Of a stretch of 64,000 nucleotides of DNA, positions 40,029-62,577 are shown piece by piece (position 1 is the stretch's first letter; each line of letters opens with the position of its first letter). The stretch spans positions 2,790,001 to 2,854,000 of the forward strand of contig OX337232.1 of NCBI GenBank assembly GCA_946965045.2. The letters are read 5' to 3'. The position numbers and the translations under genes are program-made. The stretch comes from Epithemia pelagica. Its lineage: Eukaryota; Protista; Bacillariophyta. Below the pieces are notes generated by a model, which was given only the letters and a program-made list of their open reading frames with translations, made no database searches and was not told where the DNA came from.

Positions 40029-43000
40029 TCATTCTGAACTCAGTCGAACAGGACGAGGGGAATAGATTGGTGTCACCGGGGCGAAATTCGGTCTTGCTAG
40101 GTTTGCCAGCTGGGTTGTGCGCGATCTTTGCGCAGATGTATGTGCTCTGTTGGCCGCAATTTGGTTGTTTGCATGTATCGCCAGGGACGAAACGATGGTG
40201 TGTGCCAGGGATGCTTTGGCGTAATGGGCGATTGTGTAGATGTTGGCTTCTGGATAGTGCAGTTTGGTGTCTTTGTTGGCTCGAGAGAGGATGTTGTCGG
40301 GAGCGTGTTCAACGTTCTGGTAAAGTGCGTATGCTGCTGGGTGTCGATTGCTTCGGGCGGCAGATTTGCCGAAGTGTGGATCGGTCCAGTCCGGCGGTTC
40401 AGCTGTGGAAAAGGGCAATGGGTGGTCGTGGTTGAAGAGAAGTCGGTTGGCAAAGTGGCCGAGCGATCCCAAGTGGTCCACTGTGAAGGGGATCAAGTAG
40501 ATACCATTCTGGAGTAAGTGTGTGGCGGTGTCCGGATCACGGCAGTATTTTGCCCTTGCCGCTTCGTGATGCGTCCTCGAGGCAACTTGTGCGATGAATT
40601 TGTGGTCGGACGGGTCTGGAAGGGGTGTTGGGGTCTGCGGAGGCGGAATTGTTACGTCAATGGCTACGTATCGGAACGGGTCATTTTGATGTGGTTGGGT
40701 GAGAAGCATGCCGACGTCGGCCGGGCGAATGTTGCGGCTGTGTTGTGGAGCCAAGCCCGGTGGCTCAAGGTGGACATCATGGAGTGAATCAACTGCTTTC
40801 GCGGCGGGCGCCGCATGGCGGAGGATGTCAAAAAGGGTGTCACGCACGGCGTTGGACAGTGCGGTTTTGGAGGCCTGGTTGCAATGAAAGAGGTGGTCGC
40901 CTGTTCGGTCAAGGGTCTTGCTGCAGCGGCATCGACTGTTGGTTTGGGTGTGGAGGAGTGGTAGCCGGAGTTTTCTACGTATTGCTGTCCGAAAGATTGG
41001 ATTGTCGAGTCGAAATCGTTCGGCGGGGCGTGGGAGGTGGAGTGCCATACTCGTCAACGGTGACAGGAGTGAAGGGAGGAATGCGCGTTGTGTGGGATCG
41101 GTGAGTTCGATCAGTCTGGGAATTACATGTTCTTTGAAGACATGGTTGAGTTGTCGGTTGTGGGTAGTATGATCGAAACGATCGGGGTCATGCAGTGTTT
41201 GGTCGGCGTATTCGGCATTGAAAAGTGACAGGCCTTTGCGGTAAGCTGTGATGGCCGGGTCTTCGCTATGTTCCCAGTTGATGTATTGTTGTTGGTGATG
41301 CGTTGGGACGGGGGAAGATTTGGACAGCGCCAGTTTGATTGCTCGTGCAGTTTGTGTAATGAGACGTGGGTATGCTGCTGCGGCGGCGTTGTGGTATCCC
41401 AGCCCTCCCAGTCGGTTGGGCAGGGAGGCAATGGTTGTTGTTTGTTCGGTTACGTCGGTTTCGACACACGAGGCGAGTGTGGACACAAACTTACCAATCA
41501 ACCGGTTGGTTGTTGCCGTGATTGGGCTTGTCCACAGGGTGGATCTCTGGTTGGCAGGTGGGTTGGCTTGGACGATATCGGCAGGTAGGAGGTGGAGAAT
41601 TGCCGGTATGAAGGAATACCGAAAAAGACTGCTTCTTGTTTGAAGGTCGTCTAGTTGGTTCAGTTTGTCTAGGTTGGTTTCCATCGTTTGGAGTCGTTCG
41701 CGGAGAAATTGTAGGGCAAATTGTGCCGAGCCGATGGGCTGTCCGAGGAAGCGGGTGCCTGAGGTCAGTTCTGGTGTATTTGGGTTGGCGGGACAGAGAA
41801 GGGTCAGTGCCTGTTGGAGGCATTGTTGGTGGTGGACGGGCAGTCTGTCCTTGGGGGATACCTGTGTGGTTGAGGTAAGAATCTTTGTTTTTGTGCCGTT
41901 GAGTTGGATTCCCATGGGCTCACCCAGCTGTTGAAACCGTTGAATGAACCAGTCGATATCCGGGTGGGGTAGGCAAATGGATGTATCATCCATAATCGAC
42001 GCCGTGTGCGCGATGCCGCCTTTGCCGTCGTCATAGTTATCGCCGTTGGCTGTTCTTGCCGCTGCCCTCGCGGCTTGTTCTTTGTTGATGCGATTTGTCA
42101 GTGCCAACAGAAGGAGGCATGAGAATAATGGGCTGAGAGGACAGCCCTGTGGGAATCCTTCCTCTTGGAGGAAGTAATCTGGATTGTGGTTTGCATCGAA
42201 GAACCATGATTGGCAAGGTTTGCCCGTGAGCAGGTCATAGAAGGGGACCAGTGGTGCGGTAGCTGGATCGTTGATGAGAATTTCGCGTGCTGCCGTCCTT
42301 GAAGTGTTGTTGAACATGTTGCAAAGGTCCAATAGGAGGAGGCTGCGTGATGGTAAGTTGTCTTCGTTGTCCCGGTGGATATATTTGTGGACGGCTGCCG
42401 TGGTGGTTTGGGCGACGAAATCCACGCCACCTGGAGTTTGAATTCTGTATTGTCCTCCCTTGAGGAGGATGGGCCGTACTGCATCAGTCATGTGTACTAA
42501 CGCTGTTTTTGCCGCGAGTCGTCGCAGGGCGATTCCGATGCCTATGGGCCGGAGTTTTTCCAAATTTGTCAGATCTTTGTGGAGGGCCAAGAAGTAGTTT
42601 CCCGCTAGGAGTGTTTGGATTGTTGTTGGTATTTGTCCCGTAACAATCAACTGGGTCAGTGCCATGAGGTTGGAGAAGTATGGTCTGGTGGCGTCAGGTG
42701 TGTTTGCTGTTTTATGCAACGCCATTGAGACGAGTGCGTCCGTGCAAGTGGCGTACGGGCCCGAGGCGGTTCCCGGTTTCATTTGGCGCAAGGACAGTTC
42801 GAAAAGGTCCTTGGTGAGTTGCAAGTGTTGTCTTGCTGGTGGCGGAGATTGCACAGTTCCTGTTGCTCTTGTTCCTGGTGGGGGGTTCCGCCGTTTCGGA
42901 AACAGTTCTTCTTGTATTCTTGCAATCCGTGGCGGGGTGAGTTTTGCTGTGGGCATATGCGACATCAAGCGCTTGTACGCTGTCGTGTAATTTCCGACGT

Positions 43001-43856
43001 TTGCTGCGTGTTGAGCAGACTTCAGTCTGTTCGGGGGCAGTTGTGTCGTCGTTTGTGGTTGTTGGTGGTGTCTTGACGGTTTCTTTGGTTTGTTTCTGTT
43101 GGTGTGCCGGTGGTTGGTCGGCAGTGGTTGTGGGTTCCAGGTCATTTCGTGTAATTCTTTGATCCGGCCATTCTTGAAGAGGCTTACTCGTGTGCGGAGG
43201 GCGTCGGAGTGTGTCCTGTGTACGGTTCCTTTGATAGGTGCGAGTAACAGGGGTTCAAGCAGCACCAGAAGTTTCCAAAACGGGGTGCTGTCATTGTTCC
43301 ATGCTGGTGGTTGGTCGTCGCGGAGGACAGAGGGGTGTAGTTCCGGGGTGGATTCCAGTACCCATGAAACGACGGTGTTGTAACAGACGAAAAACTCTCG
43401 ACGCAGTGGGTGCTTGAGTTTGTGCCAAGTGGTGCGGCGAAAGGGTGGTGGCTGGGGTTGGAGTTGGTGTAGCCAGGCTATGCTCTCTTTCCAGTGTGCT
43501 TGTGCCTGTGGGGATAGATGTCGGTAGGTGGTTGTAACTAGGTCGATGTTTGTTTTTTTCCTACTATGTTTTGTTGTTATATGTTGTTTGAGGTGCCTTG
43601 GTGTGGTGTAGATGGTGCTGGGAGTGTCGCAGTGGCGGCAAATGTGGAAACTGTGAGTTGTGCAGTATTCAGGGGTCATGTAGTCGGTTGGTGACGTTTC
43701 TTTGTGTTGGGTGATGAGGTGCTCTTTAAGAGCCGCCTGTGGTTTTCTGTTGATTGTTGGCACCTGCCAGTTGCAGTTGGGGACTGGGCAGTGCCGTATT
43801 CGTTGTGCCTGCCTACTCATTTGGCTCCTTGGCCCATGTATCATGCGGGACCACAT
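40029..43856 (-). CDS. Retrotransposon ORF2: zinc fingers, reverse transcriptase, CCHC and restriction-like endonuclease
   Basis: N-terminal C2H2-like fingers. RT motifs LRPIGIG..LRRL, QY.IQTPGG, LDLCNMFN, GFPQGCPLSP and IMDD. CRC...D..GDHLFHC, RPADV, AIDVT and PFTVDHLG are characteristic of the CRE clade. Confidence 0.93.
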   Translation of the reverse strand: MWSRMIHGPRSQMSRQAQRIRHCPVPNCNWQVPTINRKPQAALKEHLITQHKETSPTDYMTPEYCTTHSFHICRHCDTPSTIYTTPRHLKQHITTKHSRKKTNIDLVTTTYRHLSPQAQAHWKESIAWLHQLQPQPPPFRRTTWHKLKHPLRREFFVCYNTVVSWVLESTPELHPSVLRDDQPPAWNNDSTPFWKLLVLLEPLLLAPIKGTVHRTHSDALRTRVSLFKNGRIKELHEMTWNPQPLPTNHRHTNRNKPKKPSRHHQQPQTTTQLPPNRLKSAQHAANVGNYTTAYKRLMSHMPTAKLTPPRIARIQEELFPKRRNPPPGTRATGTVQSPPPARQHLQLTKDLFELSLRQMKPGTASGPYATCTDALVSMALHKTANTPDATRPYFSNLMALTQLIVTGQIPTTIQTLLAGNYFLALHKDLTNLEKLRPIGIGIALRRLAAKTALVHMTDAVRPILLKGGQYRIQTPGGVDFVAQTTTAAVHKYIHRDNEDNLPSRSLLLLDLCNMFNNTSRTAAREILINDPATAPLVPFYDLLTGKPCQSWFFDANHNPDYFLQEEGFPQGCPLSPLFSCLLLLALTNRINKEQAARAAARTANGDNYDDGKGGIAHTASIMDDTSICLPHPDIDWFIQRFQQLGEPMGIQLNGTKTKILTSTTQVSPKDRLPVHHQQCLQQALTLLCPANPNTPELTSGTRFLGQPIGSAQFALQFLRERLQTMETNLDKLNQLDDLQTRSSLFRYSFIPAILHLLPADIVQANPPANQRSTLWTSPITATTNRLIGKFVSTLASCVETDVTEQTTTIASLPNRLGGLGYHNAAAAAYPRLITQTARAIKLALSKSSPVPTHHQQQYINWEHSEDPAITAYRKGLSLFNAEYADQTLHDPDRFDHTTHNRQLNHVFKEHVIPRLIELTDPTQRAFLPSLLSPLTSMALHLPRPAERFRLDNPIFRTAIRRKLRLPLLHTQTNSRCRCSKTLDRTGDHLFHCNQASKTALSNAVRDTLFDILRHAAPAAKAVDSLHDVHLEPPGLAPQHSRNIRPADVGMLLTQPHQNDPFRYVAIDVTIPPPQTPTPLPDPSDHKFIAQVASRTHHEAARAKYCRDPDTATHLLQNGIYLIPFTVDHLGSLGHFANRLLFNHDHPLPFSTAEPPDWTDPHFGKSAARSNRHPAAYALYQNVEHAPDNILSRANKDTKLHYPEANIYTIAHYAKASLAHTIVSSLAIHANNQIAANRAHTSAQRSRTTQLANLARPNFAPVTPIYSPRPVRLSSE

Positions 43857-46800
43857 GGCCGGTGCGGGTGCCGGCGATGGTGGGAGGACCCGTCTCTACC
43901 AACGACTGGGCGTACTCCCACGCATCTTGCGCGTCTGTGTCCGTTGCAAAGGACCTTGTGTTTTCCAGATACCTCCTGATTTCTGGGAGGCGGGATGGGT
44001 TGTTTTCTCGGACGTACGAGAATATCATTGCGATTTCATCACCGGTCGGGGCGGATTGTCCGTTGTGGTGGTCGTCCTCTGGTGTAAGCAACGAGTGGGA
44101 GTGGTTGTCCCATTCGTCGGCGTCAGCCATCTCCTCGTCTTCGTCGTTGGAGTTGCGGCTTTGGTTGTGGTTGCTTTCGACGTTGTCGTCGTCGGACAGT
44201 TCGTCGGCCAAGTCGTCATATTGGTTTGCTCGTTTTTTGGCTTTTGGTTTTCCGTCGTCTGGGTGTGTTGGGTTCTGCAACTGTGGGGATTTGGCTATAA
44301 CAGTCTGCCAATCGGTACCGTCGTCGTATGGGTCCGATTTCTCGCTGTGGTCGCTGGAGTCGTGGTTTGGTGCTGCTCGTTTTGTTGGTGGTGGTGTTCC
44401 CGGGGGGCTTGCGCGATTTGTTTTTCCGCGGTTGGTAGGTTTCCGACGTAAGAGTCGGTCGGTGAACTCGAGAAGGCGTGAAGTGTGGCTCGACGGCGTT
44501 GAGTTGCCTTGTTGTTGGGTGGTGGACTCTGGGGAGGGGGGAGTCGCGGCAATTGCGGCCAGCGAAGGGAGAAGTATGTTGGTTGGGAATCCATTGTGCT
44601 GCCGAATGGTCGTTCCGTTCAGGTGGTGTGTGTCGGGAGTACGACGCAGATACAATGTGTACGCTTGGGGGGAGGGGTCTTCGTTGCAGAACTCAGGGAA
44701 GAGTGCAACGAATTCTTCCATGTCCTTAAGTTGTGCCCACTCGTCATCCGTTGCCTCGTGGTTGATGTGCCTAAGTTTTATTTTGATGCATGCGCCAAAA
44801 TATTGGTCGACATCCTTGAGTGCTTCCAGTGTTGTTGTCCTGGTGGTTTGGTTCTTTGGCATTGGAAGAAGTTGGATCGTGTTGTCTGTCCATTCCATTT
44901 CCATTCCTCGGTTCGATGCCCGAAAGGCGTTGTAGGAACGAAGCAGGGCTTCGAAGTTGCTGCGTGAGGACGCTGCTAGGTAGATGACTTGGACCTGTCC
45001 ACGTTGTTTGGACTTTAGGTCGCCACTAAAGGTGCCCCCTCGACATCCAATATGGTCGAAGAAGTCGTCGCCTTGTAGTTTTTTCGGTAGGTGGGGGTAG
45101 AGGCATTCACGGATGGCGAGGGCCAGGTCCATAAAGCCGCGTCGGTGTTTTACCGCCATCGCTGGAACACCGACGATGATGCCGAACGTGTCGCTGGTGC
45201 GGTTGTTGCATGCTGGGACATAAACGTGAATCTGGTCGTACCGGGGGTTGACCGTGGGGTTTGACTGCGCCGTACCAGGGCGGAGAATGTATTGGTACCC
45301 GTATTCGTCGAAGAGGAAGTCGGACTGGTGGTGGCGATGCCAGAGTTGGAGGGCAAAACGTAGCCCTTGTTCGGTGAAGACTTCGGTGTCGAATTGGTCG
45401 TTGGCGGGGGCGGGCGACAGGGTCATGTGGAAGGTGGATGTGTGTCCTCCTCGGGGACGGTTGGGACTTTCGTTTTGGTTGCGCCCGGTGGGGCGTCCTG
45501 ATTGTTTTGTTTCGATGAAATCCATCGAATGCACTTGCAACCACATTGGGTCTTCTCGTTTATTGTGGTGTTGGAACACGTGGTTGAAGTGTTCAGTGAG
45601 TGACTCTTCCGTCAGGCGGGGGAGCGTGGCTTCCACCTGTGGATTGGGGTTGTGATTCACCGCCACATGAAGGTGAATCAAGATTGCCGGCTCTTGGGCT
45701 GGCGGTTTCTTCGTTTTCGGGGCTGGCGACTTGCGGTACGGATTGTGGATGGGGGTGGTGGTTTCGTTGTTCGGCTCGCTGTTGGTTGGCCCGTTGTGGT
45801 TTTCTTCGTCGTTGGGTTCGTCGGTGGGGGGTTGGTTGGTCTCGGTGGAGTCCTTGTTGTCTTCGCCCCCTGTATTGGCGGCGATGTTGTAGTGGGTGGC
45901 TGGGATTGGCTGGGTGTGGTTGCCGGCGGAGTCTTTGGCTTGGTGTTTGTCGTCTTTGTGGGTGTTGGTGTTGTCGTTGGATTGATTTTTGTCATTTTTA
46001 TGGTTGTTGGTGTTTTCGTTGGTTTGGTTTTTGTCGTTTTTCTGGTTGGTTTGATGGGAGAGTTCGGTGCCGGTGTTGGTGTGTTGGTTGCTGCCGTCGT
46101 GGTGTTTGTGGGTGTTCTTCTCTGGGGTGATGGTGGTGGCGTCGGTGAGGTGTTGCTGCTCGGCGGCGGGGGGTTCCATGGTCGGAGAATGGTTGCGCGA
46201 GGGCTTTCCGGACGACTTGTAGGTGGGAGATCTCTTGGTTGTCACCGCAGGGGCGAGTTTGTTGCCGCGGTGGGCAGGCGGACGGCCAAGGGTAGGCTTG
46301 GAGTGGACGTGCATGGTGCTGGTGGGCGGGTCGGAGGACTGGGGACTGCGGGAGCAGGCTGGTAACTTGGGAAAGACTGGGTTTTCCAAAGTTGTGCGCT
46401 TGGTTTGTCGTCTCTTGGAGTCATTTGGTCGGTCATTTCGTTGGTGGCTTGGTGTTGGTGTCGCTGGTCCGCGTGGCTGCAGCAGGCGGGTGTCTGTTTG
46501 GGTAGTGGTTGATCTTGTTGGTTTCTGAGCACTTGGTGGCGCTTGTTGGTTAGGGTTGCTTCCGGGGAGTGTTGGGATGGCGAAGTGTACCGTGTCCATG
46601 GTGTCGGCATTCGGTTTGTCTGCCTTTTGGGTGGTGTGTTGGCCCGTGGCCTCGGTGTTTTGTTGTTCTGTGGTTTTCGGCGTGTGGACGAATTCGTGTT
46701 GGTCCGAGTGACCGTTCTGTCGTTTGGGCCTTTTGGGCCCGGCTGCGGCTGGTTGGGTTCTTTGGCCATGGGCCGGGTTGCCGTTCGGTGGTAGTTGGTT

Positions 46801-47136
46801 TTGTTTGGTTTTTCGCAGACGAGGTAGAAGTTCCATGACGAGTGGAAGAGTCGCCTTGCTTGCCCAGGCTGTCTCGGGACATGTGGGTTCGGTTTGGGGG
46901 ATTGATCGGCATTTCGGTCGTGGTTGAACCATAGGTCGTGCAGTTTGAGCCGAGTTTGACCATGGCGGGTCCGCGGGGCGCGCCGTTTGCGGCGCGGCCG
47001 TCATCCGCGGCAGGTTTAGGCAGGAAAGGGGCGGCGCAGTCTCGGCAAGGCGTTGATGTCGGCCCCAGAGTAGTTCACAGGATGGTTTCTTTGTTGTGTT
47101 CGGTTCAAAGTTCGGTTTTTTTTTTATTTTCCCCAA
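43813..47136 (-). CDS. Retrotransposon ORF1 (1107 aa; disordered termini, central globular region)
   Basis: Uninterrupted ORF upstream of ORF2 and overlapping it by 44 nt. The true start may be a downstream ATG. Confidence 0.8.
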   Translation of the reverse strand: MGKIKKKPNFEPNTTKKPSCELLWGRHQRLAETAPPLSCLNLPRMTAAPQTARPADPPWSNSAQTARPMVQPRPKCRSIPQTEPTCPETAWASKATLPLVMELLPRLRKTKQNQLPPNGNPAHGQRTQPAAAGPKRPKRQNGHSDQHEFVHTPKTTEQQNTEATGQHTTQKADKPNADTMDTVHFAIPTLPGSNPNQQAPPSAQKPTRSTTTQTDTRLLQPRGPATPTPSHQRNDRPNDSKRRQTKRTTLENPVFPKLPACSRSPQSSDPPTSTMHVHSKPTLGRPPAHRGNKLAPAVTTKRSPTYKSSGKPSRNHSPTMEPPAAEQQHLTDATTITPEKNTHKHHDGSNQHTNTGTELSHQTNQKNDKNQTNENTNNHKNDKNQSNDNTNTHKDDKHQAKDSAGNHTQPIPATHYNIAANTGGEDNKDSTETNQPPTDEPNDEENHNGPTNSEPNNETTTPIHNPYRKSPAPKTKKPPAQEPAILIHLHVAVNHNPNPQVEATLPRLTEESLTEHFNHVFQHHNKREDPMWLQVHSMDFIETKQSGRPTGRNQNESPNRPRGGHTSTFHMTLSPAPANDQFDTEVFTEQGLRFALQLWHRHHQSDFLFDEYGYQYILRPGTAQSNPTVNPRYDQIHVYVPACNNRTSDTFGIIVGVPAMAVKHRRGFMDLALAIRECLYPHLPKKLQGDDFFDHIGCRGGTFSGDLKSKQRGQVQVIYLAASSRSNFEALLRSYNAFRASNRGMEMEWTDNTIQLLPMPKNQTTRTTTLEALKDVDQYFGACIKIKLRHINHEATDDEWAQLKDMEEFVALFPEFCNEDPSPQAYTLYLRRTPDTHHLNGTTIRQHNGFPTNILLPSLAAIAATPPSPESTTQQQGNSTPSSHTSRLLEFTDRLLRRKPTNRGKTNRASPPGTPPPTKRAAPNHDSSDHSEKSDPYDDGTDWQTVIAKSPQLQNPTHPDDGKPKAKKRANQYDDLADELSDDDNVESNHNQSRNSNDEDEEMADADEWDNHSHSLLTPEDDHHNGQSAPTGDEIAMIFSYVRENNPSRLPEIRRYLENTRSFATDTDAQDAWEYAQSLVETGPPTIAGTRTGHVVPHDTWAKEPNE

Positions 47137-47397: not shown

Positions 47398-48908
47398 ATG
47401 TGTGAGCAAGAGAGAACGAGGTTTCCGCCGGATTCCATGCCACACCGTTCGGCCACACCGACGGAACGTCCGGACTACACAAGGGACGAGGTGAGGAAAC
47501 ACAAGACAGTCTCGGATGCGTGGGTGATTTACCGAAACAAGGTTTACAACATTTCGGAATGGTACGAGCATCCAGGGGGTGCCGTCATTTTCTCCTGTTC
47601 CGGTCAAGACATTACCGATGTGTTTCCAGCCATGCATTCCCCTGCCGCGTATGCGCGGATGGAGCCCTTGTGCATTGGGAATCTCGTCGAATCCAATGCC
47701 GTGACAAAAGGAACCAAGGAACATCGACAAATGGAATTTGAAAAGGCCTATCGCAAGTTGCGAAGTGACTTGGTCGCCATGGGCTTGTTCAAGCCCTTGC
47801 GATGGTATTATGTGTACAAAATGGCATCCACCTTTGCCTTGGGAGTAGTGGCTGTCTACTGTATTCTCTTCTTTGAGTCAGCGTGGATACATGTATTGGG
47901 TGCCACACTACTGGGACTTTACTTTCAACAGAGTGCTTGGATCTCGCACTTTTTGCTGCATCATCAGGTATTTACCAATCGTCGGTATGCCGATTACTGG
48001 GCTTTGATATGGGCCAATGTCATGGAGGGATATTCCATGCAATGGTGGAAAAACAAACATGCCGAACATCACGCTGTTACCAACATGGAAGATTCCTCTC
48101 CGGGTGCGCAAGATGGAGACCCCGATTTGGATACCATGCCCGTCTTGGCATGGAGTCTCTATCAAATTAAATTGTACTTTGACTCGCTGGCCAAGGATAC
48201 AACGACAGGTTCAGAGAATGAGACAGGGCAGACTCCATCTCCGCTGATTCAATTTCTGATCAAACACCAAGCCTACACTTTCTTCTTCGTATTGCTACTG
48301 GCTCGATTGTCATGGATGAATGAATCCTTCAAGGTAGCTTTTGAACTGGGAGGCCCTACCAACAATATGGTCTTGGAGATTCAAAGAATGGGCCTTCGAT
48401 ATCCACGGCTGGAAAAGGTGGGTATTCTGGCCCATTATCTATGGACGGCGTGTGTGGCAAGTCATTTTGGACAATGGTCGCTCTGGTCACGGCCTGGTTG
48501 TATCTTGTCATGACGGCCACCTGTGGCTTTTTTCTGGCCGTCACCTTTGTGTTGGGACACAATGCCATGGGCTTGTATCCCGCAGGTGCCTCACAACGAC
48601 CCGACTTTTGTACTCTCCAAGCCAATACCTGTCGCCATGTCAATACCGGTCGTGGGTTGGAAAAAGTGTGGTGGGATTGGTTCAATGGAGCCTTTCAAAA
48701 TCATATTGATCATCATCTGTTCCCACTCATGCCTCGACCCAATCTCGCCCGGGCGCATCCCTACATTCAAAGTTTTTGTCAGGAATGGAATGTGCCCTAT
48801 CATGAAACAACCATGATGGGTGGGATTCGAGAAATTTTGCACCATTTGAATCAAGTGGCCGGAGATTTTGTCCTGGAGTTTGTTCAAGAGGGTCCCGGTA
48901 TGATGTAG
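47398..48908 (+). pseudogene. Cytochrome-b5-fused front-end (Delta6-like) fatty acid desaturase with a 1-nt frameshift (pseudogene or assembly error)
   Basis: b5 motif HPGG; His boxes HFLLHH, HAEHH and HIDHH. ORF 47398..48513 and ORF 48441..48908 join if one base is restored near 48484. Confidence 0.85.
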
Positions 48909-49485: not shown

Positions 49486-50991
49486 ATGGGTCTGCTTCAC
49501 TGGAGTACAAGGATTCTATTCATGTGGTTCACCTGTTCGGTGACCACCTTTGCCTTTGAACCAAGTCAGGTTGGAGTGTCTTGGAAGCACCGCTCTCGAA
49601 TGCAACAACAACCCCCTTTTCGTCCAATCTTCCAATCGGCAGGTCCTCTCTTGGCGTCCAACGACATGGATCACCTGGCTTCGGAATGGGTCAATCTAAA
49701 CAAAGACTCGGATTCGTCCGATCCGTCTCCACCACCACCGGGCCCAACGCAAATGACGAGGCATAATTTGGTCCGTCAATCGGCCAATCCCTTGAAGCGA
49801 GGTACCACGACGCAACGACGACAATTGGGTACGACCCCTCAACCTCGCTTGATTCGAGCTTCGGCGACGGCGACGGCAACGACTGGCGAGGGACCTCAAA
49901 TTGCAACGCGATGGGACAGTGTCACTCGCCGGAGTCTGGCAGCCGATACGGGGACACGACGCTTGGCCTTGAACGAAGTGTTGCATTTGACACCCAATTT
50001 GGATCATCTTCCCCAAAAACAATCCAGTCGTCCCATTGCGGCCGATACGGGAACACGACGCATGCCCCTCAATGAAGTCAAGCAAATTGCGACACGGTGG
50101 GACAGTGTGCCACAAAAACAAAGCATTCGTCCCATTGCGGCCGACACTGGAACACGACGAATGCCCCTCAATGAAGTCAAGCAAATTTCGACGCGATGGG
50201 ACAGTGTCCCTCAGAAACAACGTCAACGTCCCATTGCCGCCGATACCGGTACACGACGCATGCCCCTCAATGAAGTCAAGCAAGTGGCCACGAAATGGGA
50301 CAGCGTTCCTTGGAAAAGTAGTAGTTCGTCGGTGAAACCACGAAGTGTTGCCGCCGATACCGGAACACGTCGCATGCCCCTCAATGAAGTTCAACAGATT
50401 TCCACTCGTTGGGACAGTGTGCCCCGTCGTCGGTCCAGTGCCACCGACACGGGGACCCGCCGCATGGCCCTCAATGAAGTCCGTCCCTCCAAGGTTCCTG
50501 CGATTACCTCCCAAAGCCGCAAAGTGATTGAATCCCATTCGGTGAATGCTCTCACGGCCGTACCGGACATGTCACAAGCATTGTATGACAAACGGAACCA
50601 ACAGGTTGTCGCAGCCGCAGAAGAATCGGCCGCTCAATCTCGATGGGGATCCTTGGAAACCGACAAGGCCGCCCAAGTATTGACGGGTGGAACCAATGTG
50701 GGAGCAGCTGCGCCACCACCACAAGTGTCTGTACCGCCTCCTGTGGGACCTGGTCATTTGGTGGTGGAAGATTCCTCCCCACCACCTTCCACATCGACAA
50801 GTATGGATCAGTTGGCATTGGAATGGAGTGCCCTCAACAAGGACCACGATGCACCATCAACCGCCGCCACCCCTCCTCCTCCTCCTTCACCAGCGACTCC
50901 CCCTCCTCCGCCACCTCCGTCGGCTGGTGGAACCACAATGGAACAATTGGCCAAGGAATGGGGTGCCATGAACAAGGATTCCGACAACTAA
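49486..50991 (+). CDS. Predicted plastid-targeted, Arg-rich tandem-repeat protein
   Basis: ATG 49486 gives a signal peptide ending VTTFA followed by FEP (ASAFAP-like). Six ADTGTRRxxLNEV and five [RK]WDSV repeats (~33-aa unit); three M.QLA.EW..[LM]NKD-like motifs. Confidence 0.8.
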   Translation: MGLLHWSTRILFMWFTCSVTTFAFEPSQVGVSWKHRSRMQQQPPFRPIFQSAGPLLASNDMDHLASEWVNLNKDSDSSDPSPPPPGPTQMTRHNLVRQSANPLKRGTTTQRRQLGTTPQPRLIRASATATATTGEGPQIATRWDSVTRRSLAADTGTRRLALNEVLHLTPNLDHLPQKQSSRPIAADTGTRRMPLNEVKQIATRWDSVPQKQSIRPIAADTGTRRMPLNEVKQISTRWDSVPQKQRQRPIAADTGTRRMPLNEVKQVATKWDSVPWKSSSSSVKPRSVAADTGTRRMPLNEVQQISTRWDSVPRRRSSATDTGTRRMALNEVRPSKVPAITSQSRKVIESHSVNALTAVPDMSQALYDKRNQQVVAAAEESAAQSRWGSLETDKAAQVLTGGTNVGAAAPPPQVSVPPPVGPGHLVVEDSSPPPSTSTSMDQLALEWSALNKDHDAPSTAATPPPPPSPATPPPPPPPSAGGTTMEQLAKEWGAMNKDSDN

Positions 50992-51552
50992 GAAACGGGG
51001 AGATAGCTGAATGAGAGAGAACGAAGGAGTCCTTGTGTAATCCACATGTGTAAAAACAAAGAAAAAGAAAATGCGTTTTTTTTTGCAGAGAGGAGATGAT
51101 TCTACCGTCTCATGTTTGATTTGAGCTGTGCATGGTTTCTTGGGATGAGAGAATTCATGTAAGAAAACGAGAAGATGACGCGAGTTGTTTGGTTTCTTAT
51201 GTATCGTTCTGCATCGCATCTCTCACCTCTTGTATGCTCCCTGTATACACTCTCTAGGCATCCCCTCATTTCGTGTATTGCGCTGGTAGAAGACACCTCC
51301 GATCCTGTTCCATGATAGCTAGTATTGTGATGCCATAACTTGCGAAAAGAGGTATTAGGAGTGTTGAATTGTGTGATGGACAAACCTCTAGCTAGACGTA
51401 TTCATGGCTCCATTCGTTTAGTTTCGAGGAGAATGGGCATAATGACTACCCCTGCTATTTCATCCTCTTCGATCAATGACGTCAGTCACGGATACCATGG
51501 ATTCAGGACTGGATCTTTCGTGTCTTTCTCTTGTTTCTGTCGTGTCAACACC

Positions 51553-52323
51553 ATGACGAAACGACGGGCATCGACCGACTCAAGGAAAACAAGCATGCAG
51601 TACTCAGACAAGCTCACGAATGGTAACAGCCGTAGTTTGAGCCATACACTAGGTGGATTCGCCGGCCTTGTGGTTTTGTGTCTCTGTTTGACATGGTGTC
51701 AAACAGAGGCATTTCCTGTGCGTTGGACTTCAACAACAAGATCAGCAACTAGTGGTCCTATCCACCTGAAAAGTATTACTGGATTCCGGTCGTCTCTTCC
51801 ATCATCATCCATATTGTTCATGTCGTCGTCGTCCTTGCAAGAGCAACCCAGCAGTGATTTGGACGGTGAACCACAACATCCAGCCGTCGTCTCATGGCCT
51901 GACAAGTACAAGGAATGTGGAGGTCTGTTCGAGTACACACATCCAGACACCAAAGCGGCAACGACGACACCAACAGCAACATTGTCGCCTCAATTGACGG
52001 GTCCTCGTCCCTTGCATTCCGATTTTGTCGTGATTCGGGCCTCCCCCAAGGCCTTGGAGGATTTGGATGTGGAACATTGGCCCGTATGGACGACGGGAGA
52101 CAAACCCAAATGGGCCGTTGGCAACCGTGTCTCCGACAAAATCATGCCGTATGGAGAATTGAGCTTTGTTCTGCAAGGGTCCCTCGAAATACAACCCACG
52201 ACTGGGAACAAGGACGAACCGTCGGTATTGATTGAACCTGGACACTTGGTCACCTTCCCACCGGGGTTTCAAGCATCGTGGACCGTAAAGGAAGAACTGA
52301 CATGGAAATATTATCTCTATTGA
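51553..52323 (+). CDS. Cupin_3 (DUF861)-like protein with a predicted bipartite plastid presequence
   Basis: Hydrophobic segment GLVVLCLCLTWCQTEA followed by FP and a Ser/Thr/Arg-rich transit region. C-terminal WPVW..ELSFVLQG..IEPGHLVTFPPGFQASW.V.E..KYY cupin. Start is 51553 or 51595. Confidence 0.8.
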   Translation: MTKRRASTDSRKTSMQYSDKLTNGNSRSLSHTLGGFAGLVVLCLCLTWCQTEAFPVRWTSTTRSATSGPIHLKSITGFRSSLPSSSILFMSSSSLQEQPSSDLDGEPQHPAVVSWPDKYKECGGLFEYTHPDTKAATTTPTATLSPQLTGPRPLHSDFVVIRASPKALEDLDVEHWPVWTTGDKPKWAVGNRVSDKIMPYGELSFVLQGSLEIQPTTGNKDEPSVLIEPGHLVTFPPGFQASWTVKEELTWKYYLY

Positions 52324-55600: not shown

Positions 55601-57326
55601 AAGCACTGATAGGTCGTCAACACAACGTCATATTTACGCATAATTTCGGGCGTCATACTGGACCGATTTGGTCCATGATAAACACCGACGGTAAAGGTGG
55701 ATTCCTCTGTAAACTTTTCAATTTCCGATTTCCACTGAAGTAGAGCAATAACAGGACAAACGACAAGTGTTCCGGCTCTTCCGCCTGGAATGTTTTTCTT
55801 ACGTGGGAGCATTTTCTTGGGTATCTCATTCATTTTCATTTCGTGCTGCCATTCTTCCAGGGCTTGCTTCCACAGGGACTGTTCTCTCACGCGAGCTTCA
55901 AAGTCATGGGCATCCGGGGCGTGCTTGGATCCAACAGGACAATGCTGTAGAAGCGGCCGATTATCGCACATGGTTGCAATCGTTTGAACCGTTTTGCCCT
56001 GAAACAGAATATTAGTGCACTAGCTCCGAAAAATTTCAACGACGCATCTTTTCTACTTACCATTCCCATTTCATCGGCTAGCATGCCTCCGCGGCAAGCC
56101 CCCTCCTCTCCCGCTGCATCATTTACTTCTTGGTGTCGCATCCAGGAGAATCCCTCTACTTGAAAGGGCAAAAGATTCGCCGTCAAACCAGGTGGAGTAG
56201 GTCTCATTTCTCCCGAAAACGATGTTTGTACCAATTCATCGGGTTGGAGTTCCTTCTCTTCATCTTCTCGTTCCAGGGCAGCTTCTGCCACGCGGTCTTT
56301 GAGCTTTTGCAGATCGGCAGCCTTTAAGCGCTGCCAACCACGCACATCTCGTGCCCTTTGGATCGAATCGTCAAAGGGGGCGCACTGTAAATGGCGATAG
56401 ACAATAAAGCCTCGTTGTCCTCGAAACAGGGGACGATGACTCACACGAATATCACCCTTGAGAATGGTATTATCACACCGACGACAGACCGCCCGACCCG
56501 TGGGGGAATATTCGACAACAAACGGAAAATCGTCCGAATCGGAATCCTCGCTCTCTTGGTTATTTTGGGACTCTTGTTCGTTGGGTAATGCAACCGGTTG
56601 AACTTGTGGCTGTTCCTGAGCGGGCTGAACGGCAGTTCGCCCGATAGATCCTCGGCGAGTCGGTTCGCCCACATCCTCCTCATCCTCTGAACTAACTTGT
56701 CTTTTGGATACTTCCACTTTGCCTTTCTTGGAAGATGTGGGGCTCTGTTCCAGGCGTCGTTTGGAGGAACCCTGTGGCTTTGCTGAAAAAGCTTCATCGG
56801 AGGCGGTTTCTTCTTCTTGGAGTGGATGCGGAGAGGGAGTGACGGTAGAGCATTCTCGGCAAAAGTCGTTCATGATCATATCGTCCACAATCGCCGACCT
56901 GTCCTTCTTAGACAAAGTTGGTTTGACCTTTTTGGGATTTTTTGCCGAGGCGGATGCTGAATCCTTTCCATTCCTTGAAGAAGAGGACGAAGCGCCGCGC
57001 GACGATCGCCGCTTTCGTTGTCCTCCCAAAGCCTCGTTCTTCTTCTTCTCGTCGTCGTCAACCAACGCGCGAAGCTTTTCCGGATCACAAACTTCTCGAA
57101 TCTTGGACACATGAAACTTTACAAGAACACCATCGTTGCGAGCTTCCTTGTTTGTTGTTTCGTCGGCCGTTCTCGAAGAATCCTCGCTCTCATCACTGTC
57201 CGGGGTCCAGGACACATTGGTTTCCAATACCGTGGCCGGTTCTTCATGTACATTTCCAGTCAACACCCAGACCACATCGCCCGTCGAAAACGAAGTTTCT
57301 TCCTGTTCTGCTCTGGTTGCTGCCAT
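52610..57326 (-). CDS. RAD16: RAD16/RAD5-like SNF2 helicase with RING finger and N-terminal PARP-type zinc finger, 8 exons, ~1414 aa
   Basis: Exons 57326-56061, 55998-55563, 55494-54742, 54676-54458, 54395-54322, 54258-54034, 53947-53624 and 53557-52610 total 4245 nt in frame. Motifs LADEMGMGKT, VVLDEAH, SGTPLQN, LLRRTK, RING CDIC..CQSC..CPSC, SLKAGGVALNL and QAIDRTHRLGQ. zf-PARP VEYSPTGRAVCRRC..RHLQC. Confidence 0.92.
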
Positions 57327-57531
57327 GGTGGTGGAGTCCCCCGCCGCACCGCGGCTGATTCAATGATGAACTTGATTCCGAGAGAAAAATGTGTGTTTGT
57401 GTGCGGTGGTCGATCCCCGATGGGGGAACAACGAAGAAATGTGCCCTTTGATTCACTGACCACGACCAATGACAAAGGCGCTACGCAGGCTATGAGCTAT
57501 GAGCGGTAACGATGGTGGAGTCTCCTCCTCT

Positions 57532-57879
57532 CTAGTAATAAAACCTACCGGTGAAACCATAAGATATCTGTTTTAGGGAATGATTTGTCAAACTGACAAG
57601 GGCTAGGTTAGGACTGTGCAAGACCAGAGTGGAGAAAAGAGGGAGCATTTGTTCCACGGCGGGTGTCATTTCGAATGCCACCTCCACTACACCAGTAGTA
57701 TAGAGAGGGTGGATGCAAACCACGGCGGCGGCAAGGCCCTTGTATCGTATTACATAGGCGGACCATAACCATACTGCCACTGGGGTGATGAGGAAGATGA
57801 GGAAATTGGGTGGTGGTGGTTGTTCGGTGGACCCATTCTGTGTTTTATTAACACAAGGCTGGAACAACCAAAGGACCAA
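57532..57879 (-). CDS. Possible small membrane protein or 3' exon
   Basis: 115-aa hydrophobic ORF with no recognised domain. Confidence 0.3.
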   Translation of the reverse strand: MVLWLFQPCVNKTQNGSTEQPPPPNFLIFLITPVAVWLWSAYVIRYKGLAAAVVCIHPLYTTGVVEVAFEMTPAVEQMLPLFSTLVLHSPNLALVSLTNHSLKQISYGFTGRFYY

Positions 57880-57947
57880 ATGGTGGAGGGGAAAACGAAA
57901 CCAACTGCTGGTTCTATCCGTAATACCTGGTATCTCTGGTGTTCTCT

Positions 57948-60227: not shown

Positions 60228-60840
60228 TGTCTTGTGCTATACATTGAGAGTTTGGGTTGTGTGGTTCGTATGGTCGGCGGTCTAAGGGTTCGCGTTTGGA
60301 AAGGAAATGAGAACCACCATGACACGGTGGACAGAATGGCTGGATGTCGTCGCGTTTCTCGCAGCATGAATATTCTGCCATTGAAAGCAAGACGAAAACC
60401 AAAATCCATTTCATCATTCATGCAGCATGAACTTGTTGTATCGTGCAGTCTCCAGCTTGTTTCGTCCAGTTGGCCATGGGGCTTGCCCTTTTGTGTTTGA
60501 TGAGTAGTGTAGTATTCGATGGATCGTAGGGTGTTCCACATCGCCCGACTCGTACACGCATGCCCAGCACACAGGGCGATCTGCGATTGCAGAGACAATG
60601 ATGAGGTGGTTTGATTCTGGATGGAAACAACGAGCCATGGACCAAGAATTGTTTGGGTTCTGTCCTCTGGTTGGCGTGGATTGTCGCGACATGCGGCGGT
60701 TCTCACAGAGAGAGAGAGATGCCCTCCGGCGTCCCGAACGAAAAACACTGGAACCAAAAAGAATAGTTTCTCATGCGGCCAGAATGTCAACTCTTCCCGT
60801 CTTGCAATCTTTGCGATAGACGCTGTCGTTTCCGCCTTTT

Positions 60841-60954
60841 CTAGTAGTACAAGGGCAACTCGATTGTTTCAATGGTGGCAATCGGTGTGGGCACCCACCA
60901 CCCATTGCTGTTGATGCCACCCAGGACCATGAGATGCATCGTCGTCGTCTTCTT

Positions 60955-60995
<41 letters not shown>

Positions 60996-62088: not shown

Positions 62089-62577
62089 TCTCCTGTGGCC
62101 GCAGTCTCCTCTGCTGTCGTCGTTAGTCGTCCATTGCGGATCTGAGATCCACCATCATCATCATTGCGGTTTGGGATCCAAAGCAAGACTCGAGGTCGTC
62201 ACGGATGGGTGAGGCCGACGCTTGTTTTGGTCGTGATACCGGTTCGTCCTTTGTAGGGCGGACTTCCGATCCCGCAACCCGCATCCGCAGGGTGCGGGTC
62301 GAGCTTTCTCCATCCTTTTACACGCAACAAATCGTGCAAGACGCCACAAAGACAATCCATTGTCGCTACGGTACTGTGCATTTCTTTTGACCAGCAGCGA
62401 GACACAAAAAGGGTTGAGACGACACTACAAGAAGCATATCAGAGACGCGCAAGAGAAACGCGGACGGACGAGGTGAACTATTGGAGATTCTCCCAGTCCA
62501 CCAATACGGATAGGAAGCAGTCAACGACAGTCGCACAATTCTAAAAAGGCACAGTTCCAGAACAGCCGCAAGAGAGC

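What the first reader, a model, noticed from the sequence alone, without database searches (positions are those of the whole stretch)
49486..50991. Candidate new pyrenoid/Rubisco linker: plastid-targeted disordered protein with tandem aromatic-basic sticker repeats
Seen directly: a signal peptide with an F at +1 (TFA-FEP), a disordered Arg/Thr/Ser/Pro-rich body, five Q[IV][AS]T[RK]WDSV and six ADTGTRR[ML][PA]LNEV motifs in ~33-aa units (49897-50481), and three separate helical motifs (MDHLASEWVNLNKD, MDQLALEWSALNKD, MEQLAKEWGAMNKD) flanked by poly-Pro. Established: known Rubisco condensers (Chlamydomonas EPYC1, Phaeodactylum PYCO1 with KWSP-type stickers) are plastid-targeted, disordered, repeat-built, use Trp plus basic stickers, and share no sequence homology across lineages. 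Inference: this is a lineage-specific multivalent plastid scaffold with two sticker classes, possibly for Rubisco and for a shell or membrane partner.
Basis: partly seen in the sequence, partly recalled or inferred. Interest (0 to 1): 0.82.

Follow-up and report, generated by a model that had tools for sequence, protein, structure and literature searches.

The report
Diatom protein with Rubisco-gripping helices
A diatom gene encodes a chloroplast-addressed, mostly floppy protein with three copies of the short tryptophan helix that the known linker PYCO1 uses to grip Rubisco, plus six copies of a new repeat, so it is a good but untested candidate part of the CO2-fixing pyrenoid.

Summary

The three "separate helical motifs" fit the PYCO1 Rubisco large-subunit-binding helix (AAEWGSMNQ, Oh et al. 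2023). A scoring matrix built only from other diatoms' copies gives the PYCO1 peptides and the window helices comparable scores.

The protein also carries one "RWG" module (42 bits), found widely in chloroplast-addressed diatom proteins and of unknown function.

The six 33-residue Arg/Trp repeats are new. They occur only here and in an Epithemia orthologue, and are under strong purifying selection. Their binding partner is unknown.

The layout resembles PYCO1: lineage-specific Trp repeats followed by two C-terminal large-subunit helices. It lacks PYCO1's KWSP and GTGYNP stickers, so it is not a PYCO1 orthologue.

The scan had already found the same helix on other genes of this genome. I confirmed one of them: a protein with 17 helices lies 16 kb downstream, next to an iota-carbonic anhydrase with RWG modules.

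Most likely this is an accessory linker or adaptor that docks on Rubisco, not the main condenser. Localisation and Rubisco binding are untested.

The parts
49486..50991 (+). Complete single-exon gene, 501 aa plus stop codon
   Evidence: ORF listing and translation. In-frame-only indels and an excess of synonymous variants in public runs. No joints in the laid contigs.
49486..49554 (+). Signal peptide, aa 1-23, ending TFA with F at +1 (diatom ER plus ASAFAP-type plastid signature)
   Evidence: It is the only hydrophobic segment of the protein. AlphaFold2 predicts a helix at aa 2-21 with pLDDT about 75. The Epithemia orthologue has GA|FAP. SignalP and ASAFind were not available.
49555..49659 (+). 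Transit-peptide-like region, aa 24-58: net +3, pI 11.7, one acidic residue
   Evidence: Composition. The stromal processing site is unknown, so this is an inference.
49660..49713 (+). Large-subunit-type helix 1 (NDMDHLASEWVNLNKDSD), aa 59-76
   Evidence: Scores 14.2 bits (E 1.5e-6) against an HMM built without the window rows and 33.7 bits on the 18-column PSSM. The Epithemia orthologue has a helix at the same position.
49753..49803 (+). Conserved N-terminal motif MTRHNLVRQSANPLKRG, aa 90-106
   Evidence: Also present in the Epithemia orthologue (RRMARHNLVRNAADPLKR) and in the 17-helix paralogue P0003 (TRHDLARRQVANPLLLGR).
49897..50481 (+). Arg/Trp repeat array, aa 138-332: five Q[IV][AS]T[RK]WDSVP and six A[AT]DTGTRR[ML][PA]LNEV half-motifs, period 33 aa in the core; net +17, pI 11.6
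   Evidence: AlphaFold2 places a low-confidence helix over LNEVKQIATRWD in units 2-5. Found only here and in Epithemia P0001.
50515..50550 (+). Short conserved segment SRKVIESHSVNA, aa 344-355
   Evidence: Aligned to RRKAISSNSVKA in the Epithemia orthologue.
50572..50676 (+). RWG module, aa 363-397 (LYDKRNQQVVAAA..SRWGSLETDKAAQ)
   Evidence: Scores 42.3 bits, E 2e-15, against an HMM of 386 modules from other diatom proteins. Predicted helix at aa 362-401 with pLDDT 73-89.
50797..50850 (+). Large-subunit-type helix 2 (TSMDQLALEWSALNKDHD), aa 438-455
   Evidence: Scores 29.9 bits and 47.4 bits on the PSSM. Predicted helix at aa 440-455.
50851..50931 (+). Pro-rich spacer between the two C-terminal helices, aa 456-482
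   Evidence: Read directly from the sequence. The same helix-spacer-helix order occurs in P0003, P0005, P0024 and P0026 and at the PYCO1 C-terminus.
50932..50985 (+). Large-subunit-type helix 3 (TTMEQLAKEWGAMNKDSD), aa 483-500, at the extreme C-terminus
   Evidence: Scores 32.7 bits and 48.3 bits on the PSSM. Its 9-mer core scores 26.2 bits against 26.3 for PYCO1 AAEWGSMNQ. Predicted helix with pLDDT about 84.
50992..51135 (+). Possible 3' UTR
   Evidence: Contigs of run X3 cover only 49916-51135 and stop there, whereas the DNA-like runs X1 and X2 continue. This is suggestive only, because the run's type is not on record.

Best explanation
The gene encodes a nuclear-encoded, plastid-imported, intrinsically disordered basic protein built from short Trp-centred helical 'stickers' joined by flexible Pro/Ser/Thr-rich spacers.

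Three stickers belong to the PYCO1 large-subunit-binding helix family (consensus M-x-x-L-A-x-E-W-x-x-M-N-x-D). One sits at the start of the mature protein and two at the extreme C-terminus. By analogy with the PYCO1-Rubisco cryo-EM structure, each inserts its Trp into the hydrophobic cleft between the two RbcL domains, and its Asn hydrogen-bonds RbcL Tyr89. Each contact is weak, so three copies give avidity and can bridge two Rubisco holoenzymes or dock the protein in the pyrenoid matrix.

The centre of the protein holds six copies of a new Arg/Trp repeat and one RWG module. Together these form a second multivalent interface whose partner is not known. Candidates are another Rubisco surface, the protein itself, the PyShell, or a carbonic anhydrase.

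The protein therefore most likely works as an accessory linker or adaptor of the diatom pyrenoid, with a PYCO1-like layout but different central stickers.

What is shown and what is inferred:
- Shown: gene integrity, selection, motif membership, predicted disorder and helices, the plastid-type presequence signature, and co-occurrence of the modules in other plastid-addressed diatom proteins.
- Inferred: import into the plastid, Rubisco binding, pyrenoid location, and function.
For: 1. Motif membership.
- In 32 aligned instances from at least 10 diatom proteins, A7, W10 and N14 are invariant.
- W and N are the two PYCO1 residues (W580, N584) that contact RbcL in the cryo-EM structure.
- A PSSM built from 29 instances, excluding the window and PYCO1, scores PYCO1 AAEWGSMNQ at 26.3 bits and ASEWASMNT at 23.5 bits. 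The window helices score 26.2, 20.0 and 11.4 bits. The best unrelated 9-mer among 98,283 in the six-frame window scores 9.5.
- With 18 columns, the PYCO1 peptides score 30-34 bits and the window helices 34-48, against a reference range of 21-49.
- An HMM built without the window rows gives 14.2, 29.9 and 32.7 bits.

2. Plastid address.
- The signal peptide is followed by F at +1. This is conserved as GA|FAP in Epithemia.
- About 13 full-length proteins sharing the modules also have A|F, A|W or A|Y.

3. Linker-like physics.
- Mean pLDDT is 43. With an alignment, only the RWG module and the large-subunit helices fold as helices.
- The mature protein has pI 10.4.
- 9 of its 10 tryptophans sit at the centre of a motif.

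4. Composite C-terminal module.
- The order RWG, spacer, helix, Pro-rich spacer, helix is shared with P0003, P0005, P0026 and the cluster of P. tricornutum B5Y3J5.
- The PYCO1 C-terminus has the same helix, P/A-rich spacer, helix arrangement.

5. Constraint.
- Repeat units 2-5 show pS 0.40-0.73 against pN 0.02-0.17.
- Both half-motifs are conserved almost letter for letter in Epithemia, although the proteins are only 43-49% identical overall.

6. Genomic context in the same genome.
- L002 is 100% identical to the window over 7,050 nt.
- A protein with 17 large-subunit helices and 5 RWG modules lies 16 kb downstream. An iota-carbonic anhydrase with two RWG modules lies 24 kb downstream.
- In Epithemia, the orthologue also sits next to a giant gene carrying large-subunit helices and RWG modules.

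7. Expression hints.
- Metatranscriptome contigs about 97% identical cover three parts of the gene, and run X3 shows transcript-like coverage.
Against: - No localisation, binding or expression-response data exist for this protein or its orthologue.
- Oh et al. found the large-subunit helix interaction 'relatively weak': a PYCO1 C-terminal fragment carrying both helices did not shift Rubisco on native PAGE.
- Helix 1 is the weakest match (14 bits).
- The Epithemia orthologue has only two large-subunit helices and no RWG module, so copy number is not conserved.
- SignalP and ASAFind were not run. There is a Glu at +2 after the cleavage site, which I believe is unusual.
- This organism's rbcL was not available, so conservation of the binding pocket is assumed.
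- The repeat helices in the AlphaFold2 model have pLDDT of only 30-45.
- The RNA evidence rests on contigs and on one run of unrecorded type.
Confidence: 0.55

Rival explanations
1. It is the main Rubisco condenser of this lineage, the functional replacement of PYCO1. The six Arg/Trp repeats would be high-affinity Rubisco stickers, for example on the small subunit, and the large-subunit helices would be auxiliary contacts, so the protein alone would phase-separate Rubisco.
For: - The layout parallels PYCO1: six central two-motif repeats with a basic residue next to Trp, followed by two C-terminal large-subunit helices; pI 10.4 against 10.03.
- It meets the generic linker criteria: disordered, repeated predicted helices, 33-aa spacing within the 20-120 range, pI above 8.
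- The repeats are under strong purifying selection.
- PYCO1 itself has no homologue outside Phaeodactylum.
Against: - The repeats match no known Rubisco sticker: KWSP and GTGYNP are absent, and the repeat helix scores only 1.9 bits on the large-subunit profile.
- The same genome encodes proteins with 17 and about 45-60 large-subunit helices. These are better candidates for the bulk scaffold.
- The Epithemia orthologue has only 3 W and 3 R half-motifs.
- Abundance is unknown.
Confidence: 0.17
2. It is a stromal or plastid protein whose LAxEWxxMN and RWG modules serve another shared partner, such as a chaperone, an import or sorting factor, or a thylakoid or envelope component. On this view the PYCO1-RbcL contact is incidental and the protein is not a pyrenoid component.
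For: - The large-subunit helix contact in PYCO1 is weak and not sufficient for a gel shift.
- The RWG module has no known function and no literature.
- The RWG-only family (P0012-like, with a coiled coil) has no established pyrenoid link.
- The location of the iota-carbonic anhydrase within the plastid is unsettled.
Against: - The helix was seen at 2.5 A in a defined RbcL cleft with specific W and N contacts, and those are the invariant residues of the family.
- Arrays of 17 to 45 or more copies on disordered spacers are typical of avidity-based condensate scaffolds.
- Oh et al. themselves proposed that the motif may be a general pyrenoid sticker.
Confidence: 0.15
3. It is a secreted or biosilica-associated repeat protein (cingulin- or silaffin-like). 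It would enter the ER through the signal peptide and never reach the plastid, and the Trp/basic repeats would act in cell-wall assembly.
For: - It has an N-terminal signal peptide, a Ser/Thr/Pro-rich basic body and Trp-containing repeats.
- UniProt labels the P. tricornutum motif relative B5Y3J5 'Secreted protein'. I take this to be an automatic label based on the signal peptide.
Against: - F at +1 of the cleavage site is conserved in the orthologue and in most module-sharing proteins.
- The protein is Arg-rich rather than Lys-rich (R 8.2%, K 3.8%), with no KxxK clusters.
- It carries the PYCO1 large-subunit helix, and PYCO1 is experimentally pyrenoid-localised.
Confidence: 0.05
4. It is a plastid nucleic-acid-binding protein. 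On this view, the Arg-rich repeat array (net +17) binds plastid RNA or DNA, and the terminal helices tether it.
For: The repeat region has a very basic pI of 11.6 with regularly spaced Arg pairs.
Against: - No known nucleic-acid-binding domain was found.
- High pI is equally typical of Rubisco linkers such as EPYC1, CsLinker and PYCO1.
- The module partners point to carbon fixation.
Confidence: 0.04

Closest known systems
PYCO1 (Phatr3_J49957) of Phaeodactylum tricornutum, Oh et al. 2023, PMC10288592
   Same: - Plastid-targeted, disordered and basic (pI about 10).
- Six central repeats, each with two short motifs, one of them a basic residue followed by Trp.
- Two C-terminal large-subunit-binding helices of the LAxEWxxMN family, separated by a Pro/Ala-rich spacer of about 30 residues.
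- A single RWG-like element: GARWGR near the PYCO1 N-terminus, SRWGS at aa 385-389 here.
   Different: - No KWSPRGGS small-subunit sticker and no GTGYNP self-association motif.
- No prion-like Gly/Ser/Tyr/Asn composition: there is one Tyr in the whole protein.
- The repeat period is 33 aa, shorter than I estimate for PYCO1 (not measured).
- There is an extra large-subunit helix at the mature N-terminus.
- The central repeats are unrelated in sequence. It is not an orthologue.
Same-genome paralogue 'gene A' (P0003, 1882 aa, 16 kb downstream) and giant P0002 (4133 aa)
   Same: - The same large-subunit helix and RWG modules.
- The same N-terminal TRH[ND]L.R...ANPL motif (P0003 only).
- The same A|F presequence (P0003 only).
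   Different: These carry 17 and about 45 large-subunit helices, against 3 here. They lack the Arg/Trp repeats entirely.
P. tricornutum XP_002185669.1 / B5Y3J5 (P0159), uncharacterised
   Same: A signal peptide ending VQA|F, then tandem basic Trp-centred repeats, then C-terminal large-subunit helices. The RWG-helix-helix part aligns to aa 362-500 of the window protein.
   Different: Its repeat is about 50 aa with ARWGRLDIDHASPSL, an RWG variant, not the Arg/Trp unit. It has 5 large-subunit helices. No experimental data were found.
Green-algal linkers and Rubisco-binding-motif networks: EPYC1, CsLinker, SUPA1; the Chlamydomonas motif-bearing proteins (SAGA1, RBMP1/2) are recalled, not from a call.
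   Same: The same design principle: disordered basic protein, short helical stickers spaced 20-120 residues apart, and one sticker shared among several pyrenoid proteins that organises the organelle.
   Different: No sequence relationship. Those proteins bind green-type form IB Rubisco, through RbcS for EPYC1, RbcL for CsLinker and both for SUPA1. This protein would bind red-type form ID RbcL.

Membership tests
Diatom proteins carrying the PYCO1-type RbcL-binding helix | Sequence motif LAxEWxxMN, with the Trp and Asn that contact RbcL (PYCO1 W580, N584) | tested here: met
   Three copies are present. A7, W10 and N14 are invariant in 32 instances. PSSM and HMM models built without the window give 11-26 bits (9-mer), 34-48 bits (18-mer) and 14-33 bits (HMM). 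The PYCO1 peptides quoted in the paper score 23-34 bits on the same models.
Diatom proteins carrying the PYCO1-type RbcL-binding helix | The motif adopts a helix flanked by disorder | tested here: met
   AlphaFold2 with a 12-sequence alignment predicts helices at aa 440-455 and 485-500 (pLDDT about 66-84) with disordered flanks. Helix 1 was not predicted as a helix in the single-sequence model. These are predictions only.
Diatom proteins carrying the PYCO1-type RbcL-binding helix | Plastid (stromal) targeting by a signal peptide plus an aromatic residue at +1 | tested here: met
   TFA|F here, GA|FAP in the orthologue, and A|F in most family members. This was judged by eye and by hydropathy. 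SignalP and ASAFind were not available.
Diatom proteins carrying the PYCO1-type RbcL-binding helix | Physical binding to the cleft between the RbcL domains of form ID Rubisco | not testable with these tools
   No multimer prediction or rbcL of this organism was available. The PDB copy holds no PYCO1 chain of 20 residues or more to compare against.
PYCO1 orthologues | KWSPRGGS small-subunit sticker repeats | tested here: not met
   No KWSP in the protein. The nearest is KWDSVP or RWDSVP, which lacks the GGS groove residues.
PYCO1 orthologues | GTGYNP tyrosine motif and prion-like Gly/Ser/Tyr/Asn-rich composition | tested here: not met
   No GTGYNP. Composition is Tyr 0.2% and Gly 4.6%; the protein is instead rich in Pro, Ser, Ala, Thr and Arg.
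Rubisco linker by FLIPPer-type criteria (Barrett et al. 2024; used with pI above 8 in the Ulva study) | Largely disordered, at least 3 repeats, repeat spacing 20-120 residues, pI above 8 | tested here: met
   392 of 501 residues have pLDDT below 50. There are six repeats with a 33-aa period. The mature protein has pI 10.4. Criteria are as stated. FLIPPer itself was not run.
Rubisco linker by FLIPPer-type criteria (Barrett et al. 2024; used with pI above 8 in the Ulva study) | Repeated structured (helical) element in each repeat | tested here: inconclusive
   AlphaFold2 places a 12-residue helix over LNEVKQIATRWD in units 2-5, but at pLDDT 30-45.
Rubisco linker by FLIPPer-type criteria (Barrett et al. 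2024; used with pI above 8 in the Ulva study) | High abundance, co-purification with Rubisco, and condensation of Rubisco in vitro | not testable with these tools
   This needs proteomics and biochemistry.
RWG-module proteins of diatoms (undescribed family) | Module of about 35 residues: LYDxRNxxVAAAxxAGxSRWGxxExxKA | tested here: met
   42.3 bits, E 2e-15, at aa 363-397 against an HMM of 386 modules from other proteins. The whole-library phmmer search reached E values down to 1.5e-17 on multi-copy members.
Cingulin- or silaffin-like biosilica proteins | ER signal peptide without plastid signature; Lys/Ser-rich KxxK domains | tested here: not met
   F at +1. K is 3.8% against R 8.2%, with no KxxK clusters. 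The definition of this family is from my own knowledge.

The most novel reading that the evidence does not exclude
The Arg/Trp unit (A-[AT]-D-T-G-T-R-R-M-P-L-N-E-V followed by Q-I-A-T-R-W-D-S-V-P) would be a previously unknown sticker for red-type Rubisco or for the PyShell. That would make this protein the PYCO1 replacement in a group of raphid diatoms. Together with the diatom-wide large-subunit helix and RWG modules, it would reveal a modular, mix-and-match 'sticker code' that addresses and organises diatom pyrenoid proteins, including an iota-carbonic anhydrase, partly encoded in a genomic cluster.
Probability: 0.2. Interest if true: 0.85.

Novelty: new variant of a known kind. Interest (0 to 1): 0.63.

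Why it matters
Diatoms fix about a fifth of global CO2 in pyrenoids. The only known diatom Rubisco linker, PYCO1, has no homologue outside Phaeodactylum. The large Thalassiosira study found no linker at all.

This gene shows that PYCO1's large-subunit helix is a portable module. It recurs on several plastid-addressed proteins across diatoms, combined with a second shared module (RWG) and with lineage-specific Trp repeats.

That gives concrete, short, mutable sequences to test as a general diatom Rubisco-binding and pyrenoid-targeting code. It also provides a compact 501-aa protein for in vitro condensation assays with form ID Rubisco. If the Arg/Trp repeat proves to be a new sticker, it widens the toolkit for engineering red-type Rubisco condensates.

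Tried and rejected
- **Family scans.** Pfam and NCBIfam scans of the protein found nothing significant.
- **Exact look-up.** The 501-aa product is not in the collection, although the genome is. I suspect a different gene call, but did not check.
- **Word-based searches.** The whole-protein search found only the Epithemia orthologue. A search restricted to aa 345-415 found nothing.
- **ESM Atlas.** A search with the repeat region gave no usable hit.
- **PDB sequence searches.** The C-terminus, the last 21 residues and the motif profile returned only poly-Pro or chance hits. No PYCO1 chain was retrieved. The PYCO1 comparison therefore rests on peptide strings quoted in the paper and its supplementary table.
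- **Arg/Trp helix as a diverged large-subunit helix or RWG module.** Rejected as undetectable: 1.9 bits on the large-subunit PSSM, no extra domain with the large-subunit or RWG HMMs, and the repeat HMM finds nothing in 174 motif-bearing diatom proteins.
- **RWG module as a CsoS2 N-peptide relative.** This was a lead from memory. It got no support from NCBIfam and was dropped.
- **CO2/cAMP-responsive TGACGT elements upstream.** There is one ACGTCA at 49113, which is chance level.
- **P. tricornutum relative B5Y3J5.** It is absent from all paper main texts and from the stored, truncated part of the Oh et al. Rubisco co-IP table.
- **Literature search.** I found no paper after 2023 that describes the large-subunit helix network or the RWG motif.
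- **Synteny with Epithemia.** The flanking housekeeping genes are not shared; only the linkage to a giant sticker gene is.
Full report
**1. Observation**

Window 49486-50991 (+) is one uninterrupted ORF of 501 codons starting at the first in-frame ATG.

A regex scan of all six frames of the 64 kb window found five [RK]WDSV, six TRR[ML][PA]LNEV and three EWxx[ML]N motifs, all in this ORF. Only one chance EWxxLN hit occurs elsewhere. Tandem Repeats Finder sees a 99-nt period at 50010-50310.

The N-terminus is the only hydrophobic stretch and ends TFA|FEP. The mature protein has pI 10.4 and net charge +16, and the repeat region alone is +17. Pfam and NCBIfam find nothing.

**2. It is a real, constrained gene**

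Public runs of the same organism were laid on the region.
- Every indel inside the ORF is a multiple of three: CAA after 49602, CCA after 50712, TGG after 50758. The two indels upstream of the ATG are single bases.
- Of 32 single-base variants in the ORF, 19 are synonymous. The 13 non-synonymous ones lie almost entirely in the signal or transit peptide and in spacers.
- Between repeat units 2-5, synonymous sites are nearly saturated (pS 0.40-0.73) while pN is 0.02-0.17. The repeated peptide is being maintained, not just recently copied.
- No splice-like joints were seen.
- One run (X3, type not recorded) covers only 49916-51135 and stops 144 nt after the stop codon. A metatranscriptome (X5) holds contigs about 97% identical over three parts of the gene. 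Both hint at transcription but do not prove it.

**3. Relatives**

The word search found one orthologue, Epithemia clementina ACA910_004019 (P0001, 493 aa). It shares:
- a signal peptide ending GA|FAP;
- a helix at the start of the mature protein (DSLAAAWMSMNQD);
- the RHNLVR..PLKR motif;
- three W and three R half-motifs, nearly letter-perfect;
- a C-terminal MEQLAREWGAVNQD.

The exhaustive representative search gave 33 hits. Only P0001 matches the repeat region. All the others match aa ~355-500. All hits that carry a taxon name come from diatoms: Entomoneis, Cyclotella, Phaeodactylum, Nitzschia, Skeletonema and Bacillariaceae.

**4. The three helices match PYCO1's Rubisco large-subunit sticker**

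Oh et al. 2023 modelled AAEWGSMNQ (PYCO1 577-585) as a helix in a hydrophobic cleft of RbcL. W580 sits in a pocket of F102, F104, L361, F366 and F482, and N584 hydrogen-bonds Y89. They noted a second copy, ASEWASMNT, and remarked that variations occur in other proteins.

I aligned 32 instances from the window and at least 10 other diatom proteins. The consensus is xxMxxLAxEWxxMNxDxD, and A7, W10 and N14 are invariant. W10 and N14 correspond to the two PYCO1 contact residues.

Scores on models built without the window or PYCO1:

| Peptide | 9-mer PSSM, 29 instances | 18-column PSSM | HMM without window rows |
|---|---|---|---|
| PYCO1 AAEWGSMNQ | 26.3 bits | 30.2 bits | not scored |
| PYCO1 ASEWASMNT | 23.5 bits | 33.7 bits | not scored |
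| Window helix 3 | 26.2 bits | 48.3 bits | 32.7 bits |
| Window helix 2 | 20.0 bits | 47.4 bits | 29.9 bits |
| Window helix 1 | 11.4 bits | 33.7 bits | 14.2 bits |
| Best unrelated 9-mer of 98,283 | 9.5 bits | not scored | not scored |

The extended PYCO1 strings for the 18-column test came from the paper's Table S1. The reference range on that matrix is 21-49 bits.

With a small alignment, AlphaFold2 folds helices 2 and 3 (pLDDT about 66-84) on disordered flanks.

The PDB copy has no usable PYCO1 chain, so this comparison rests on the published peptide strings.

**5. A second shared module**

Residues 363-397 match the "RWG" module (consensus SLYDKRNAKVAAAAAAGKSRWGDMEVERAKE). They score 42.3 bits, E 2e-15, against an HMM of 386 modules from other diatom proteins. 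AlphaFold2 predicts a helix there at pLDDT 73-89.

The module is undescribed: there is no Pfam family and no paper. Where it occurs:
- In tandem with large-subunit helices in P0003, P0005, P0006 and P0026.
- As an ARWGR variant in P. tricornutum B5Y3J5, and once near the PYCO1 N-terminus.
- In triplicate in a family with a coiled coil that is widespread across centric and pennate diatoms.

Most full-length carriers have a signal peptide ending in A|F. The order RWG, spacer, helix, Pro-rich spacer, helix is shared by several proteins.

**6. The Arg/Trp repeats are the new part**

- They are not detectable variants of the large-subunit helix (1.9 bits) or of the RWG module.
- A profile of the units finds nothing in 174 fetched motif-bearing diatom proteins.
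- They contain no KWSP or GTGYNP.
- The two half-motifs can occur apart. W1 has no preceding R half, and R1 and R6 have no following W half. The same is true in Epithemia. When the halves are adjacent, AlphaFold2 draws one low-confidence helix over LNEVKQIATRWD, capped by prolines.
- Nine of the ten tryptophans of the mature protein sit at the centre of one of the three motif classes.

**7. Genomic context**

Fetching the contig that encodes hit P0003 gave locus L002. Its first 7,050 nt are 100% identical to window 56951-64000. It is therefore the same genome (ENA ERZ21939226, contig ctg1348l), and it extends my view past the window's end.
- P0003 is the scan's "gene A". It has 17 large-subunit helices and 5 RWG modules and starts 16 kb downstream of this gene.
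- An iota-carbonic anhydrase (CaMKII_AD domain) lies 24 kb downstream. It has a signal peptide ending IQA|F, two RWG modules (39 and 43 bits, not in the training set) and five LP[KR]QWAALR motifs.
- In Epithemia, the orthologue lies 7 kb from a giant gene that also carries large-subunit helices and an RWG module.

This gene is thus part of a linked set of sticker-bearing genes.

**8. Mechanism and ranking**

Best reading (0.55): a stromal, disordered protein that docks on RbcL through three weak PYCO1-type helices at both ends of the chain. It presents a central array of six Arg/Trp units plus one RWG module as a second multivalent interface with an unknown partner. That makes it an accessory linker or adaptor of the pyrenoid.

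It meets generic linker criteria: disorder, 33-aa spacing and pI above 8. Its layout mirrors PYCO1. It fails PYCO1's defining stickers, so it is not an orthologue.

Rivals:
- Main condenser (0.17). Weakened by the 17- and ~45-helix paralogues.
- The modules serve a non-Rubisco partner (0.15). The large-subunit contact is weak in vitro.
- Secreted or biosilica protein (0.05).
- Nucleic-acid binder (0.04).

Nothing here tests localisation or binding.

**9. Novelty**

The helix is known from PYCO1, and its wider occurrence was mentioned in one sentence of that paper. The scan had already seen it on other genes of this genome.

New here:
- the Arg/Trp repeat family;
- recognition of the RWG module in this protein;
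- the PYCO1-like modular layout in a non-Phaeodactylum diatom;
- the verified linkage to gene A and an RWG-bearing iota-carbonic anhydrase.

I rate it a new variant of a known kind, interest about 0.63.

Noticed in passing
L002:17634-19862 (same genome; window-equivalent about 74584-76812) and L002:22098-25649: An iota-type carbonic anhydrase (CaMKII_AD/SnoaL_3 domains) with a signal peptide ending IQA|F. Its N-terminal arm carries two RWG modules (39 and 43 bits) and five copies of another Trp motif, LP[KR]QWAALR. The next large CaMKII_AD gene also has LPKQWAAVR and IPRQWAAMR.
   Followed up: partly
L002:10001-15649 (P0003; window-equivalent 66951-72599): This is the scan's 'gene A': 1882 aa, 17 large-subunit-type helices and 5 RWG modules, and an N-terminal TRHDLARRQVANPL motif like the one in this protein. 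The two look like paralogues that share their ends but have different middles.
   Followed up: partly
L001:1-2794 (-), Epithemia clementina contig JBGMNV010000373.1: The gene next to the Epithemia orthologue (2224-aa product, cut by the locus end) also contains large-subunit-type helices and an RWG module. This suggests conserved linkage between this gene family and a giant sticker protein.
   Followed up: partly
P0159 (P. tricornutum XP_002185669.1 / B5Y3J5, 640 aa): An uncharacterised Phaeodactylum protein with a signal peptide ending VQA|F, several tandem ~50-aa repeats containing ARWGRLDIDHASPSL and five YGNLAEEWSQMNKSRD helices. It is an obvious, experimentally tractable second candidate linker in the model diatom. 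PYCO1 itself has GARWGR near its N-terminus (supplementary Table S1 of Oh et al.).
   Followed up: partly
P0012 family (Cyclotella, Skeletonema, Thalassiosira, Pseudo-nitzschia, Fistulifera and others): A widespread diatom family, all annotated 'hypothetical': a signal peptide ending A|F, two coiled-coil segments, three RWG modules and a C-terminal LEDRVNLGA..LL motif. Whether it includes any of the Thalassiosira DPC pyrenoid proteins could not be checked.
   Followed up: no
window 47398-48908 (+): A front-end desaturase (cytochrome b5 plus FA_desaturase domains) is split over two overlapping frames (47398-48513 and 48441-48908). This could be a short intron or a frameshift.
   Followed up: no
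window 51340-52323 (+): The downstream neighbour encodes an EutQ-like cupin (Cupin_3). An internal Met is followed by a hydrophobic stretch ending TEA|FPV, so it may also be plastid-targeted.
   Followed up: no
window 40029-47136 (-): A 1275-aa ORF with a reverse-transcriptase domain (retroelement) and an adjoining 1107-aa ORF with no Pfam hit, in a stretch with very strong GC and AT skew (44000-47000).
   Followed up: no
window 49602, 50712, 50758: In-frame 3-nt length variants (an extra Gln, Pro or Trp/Gly codon) between alleles or strains in the Gln run and the Pro-rich spacers. The spacers tolerate length change while the motifs do not.
   Followed up: partly
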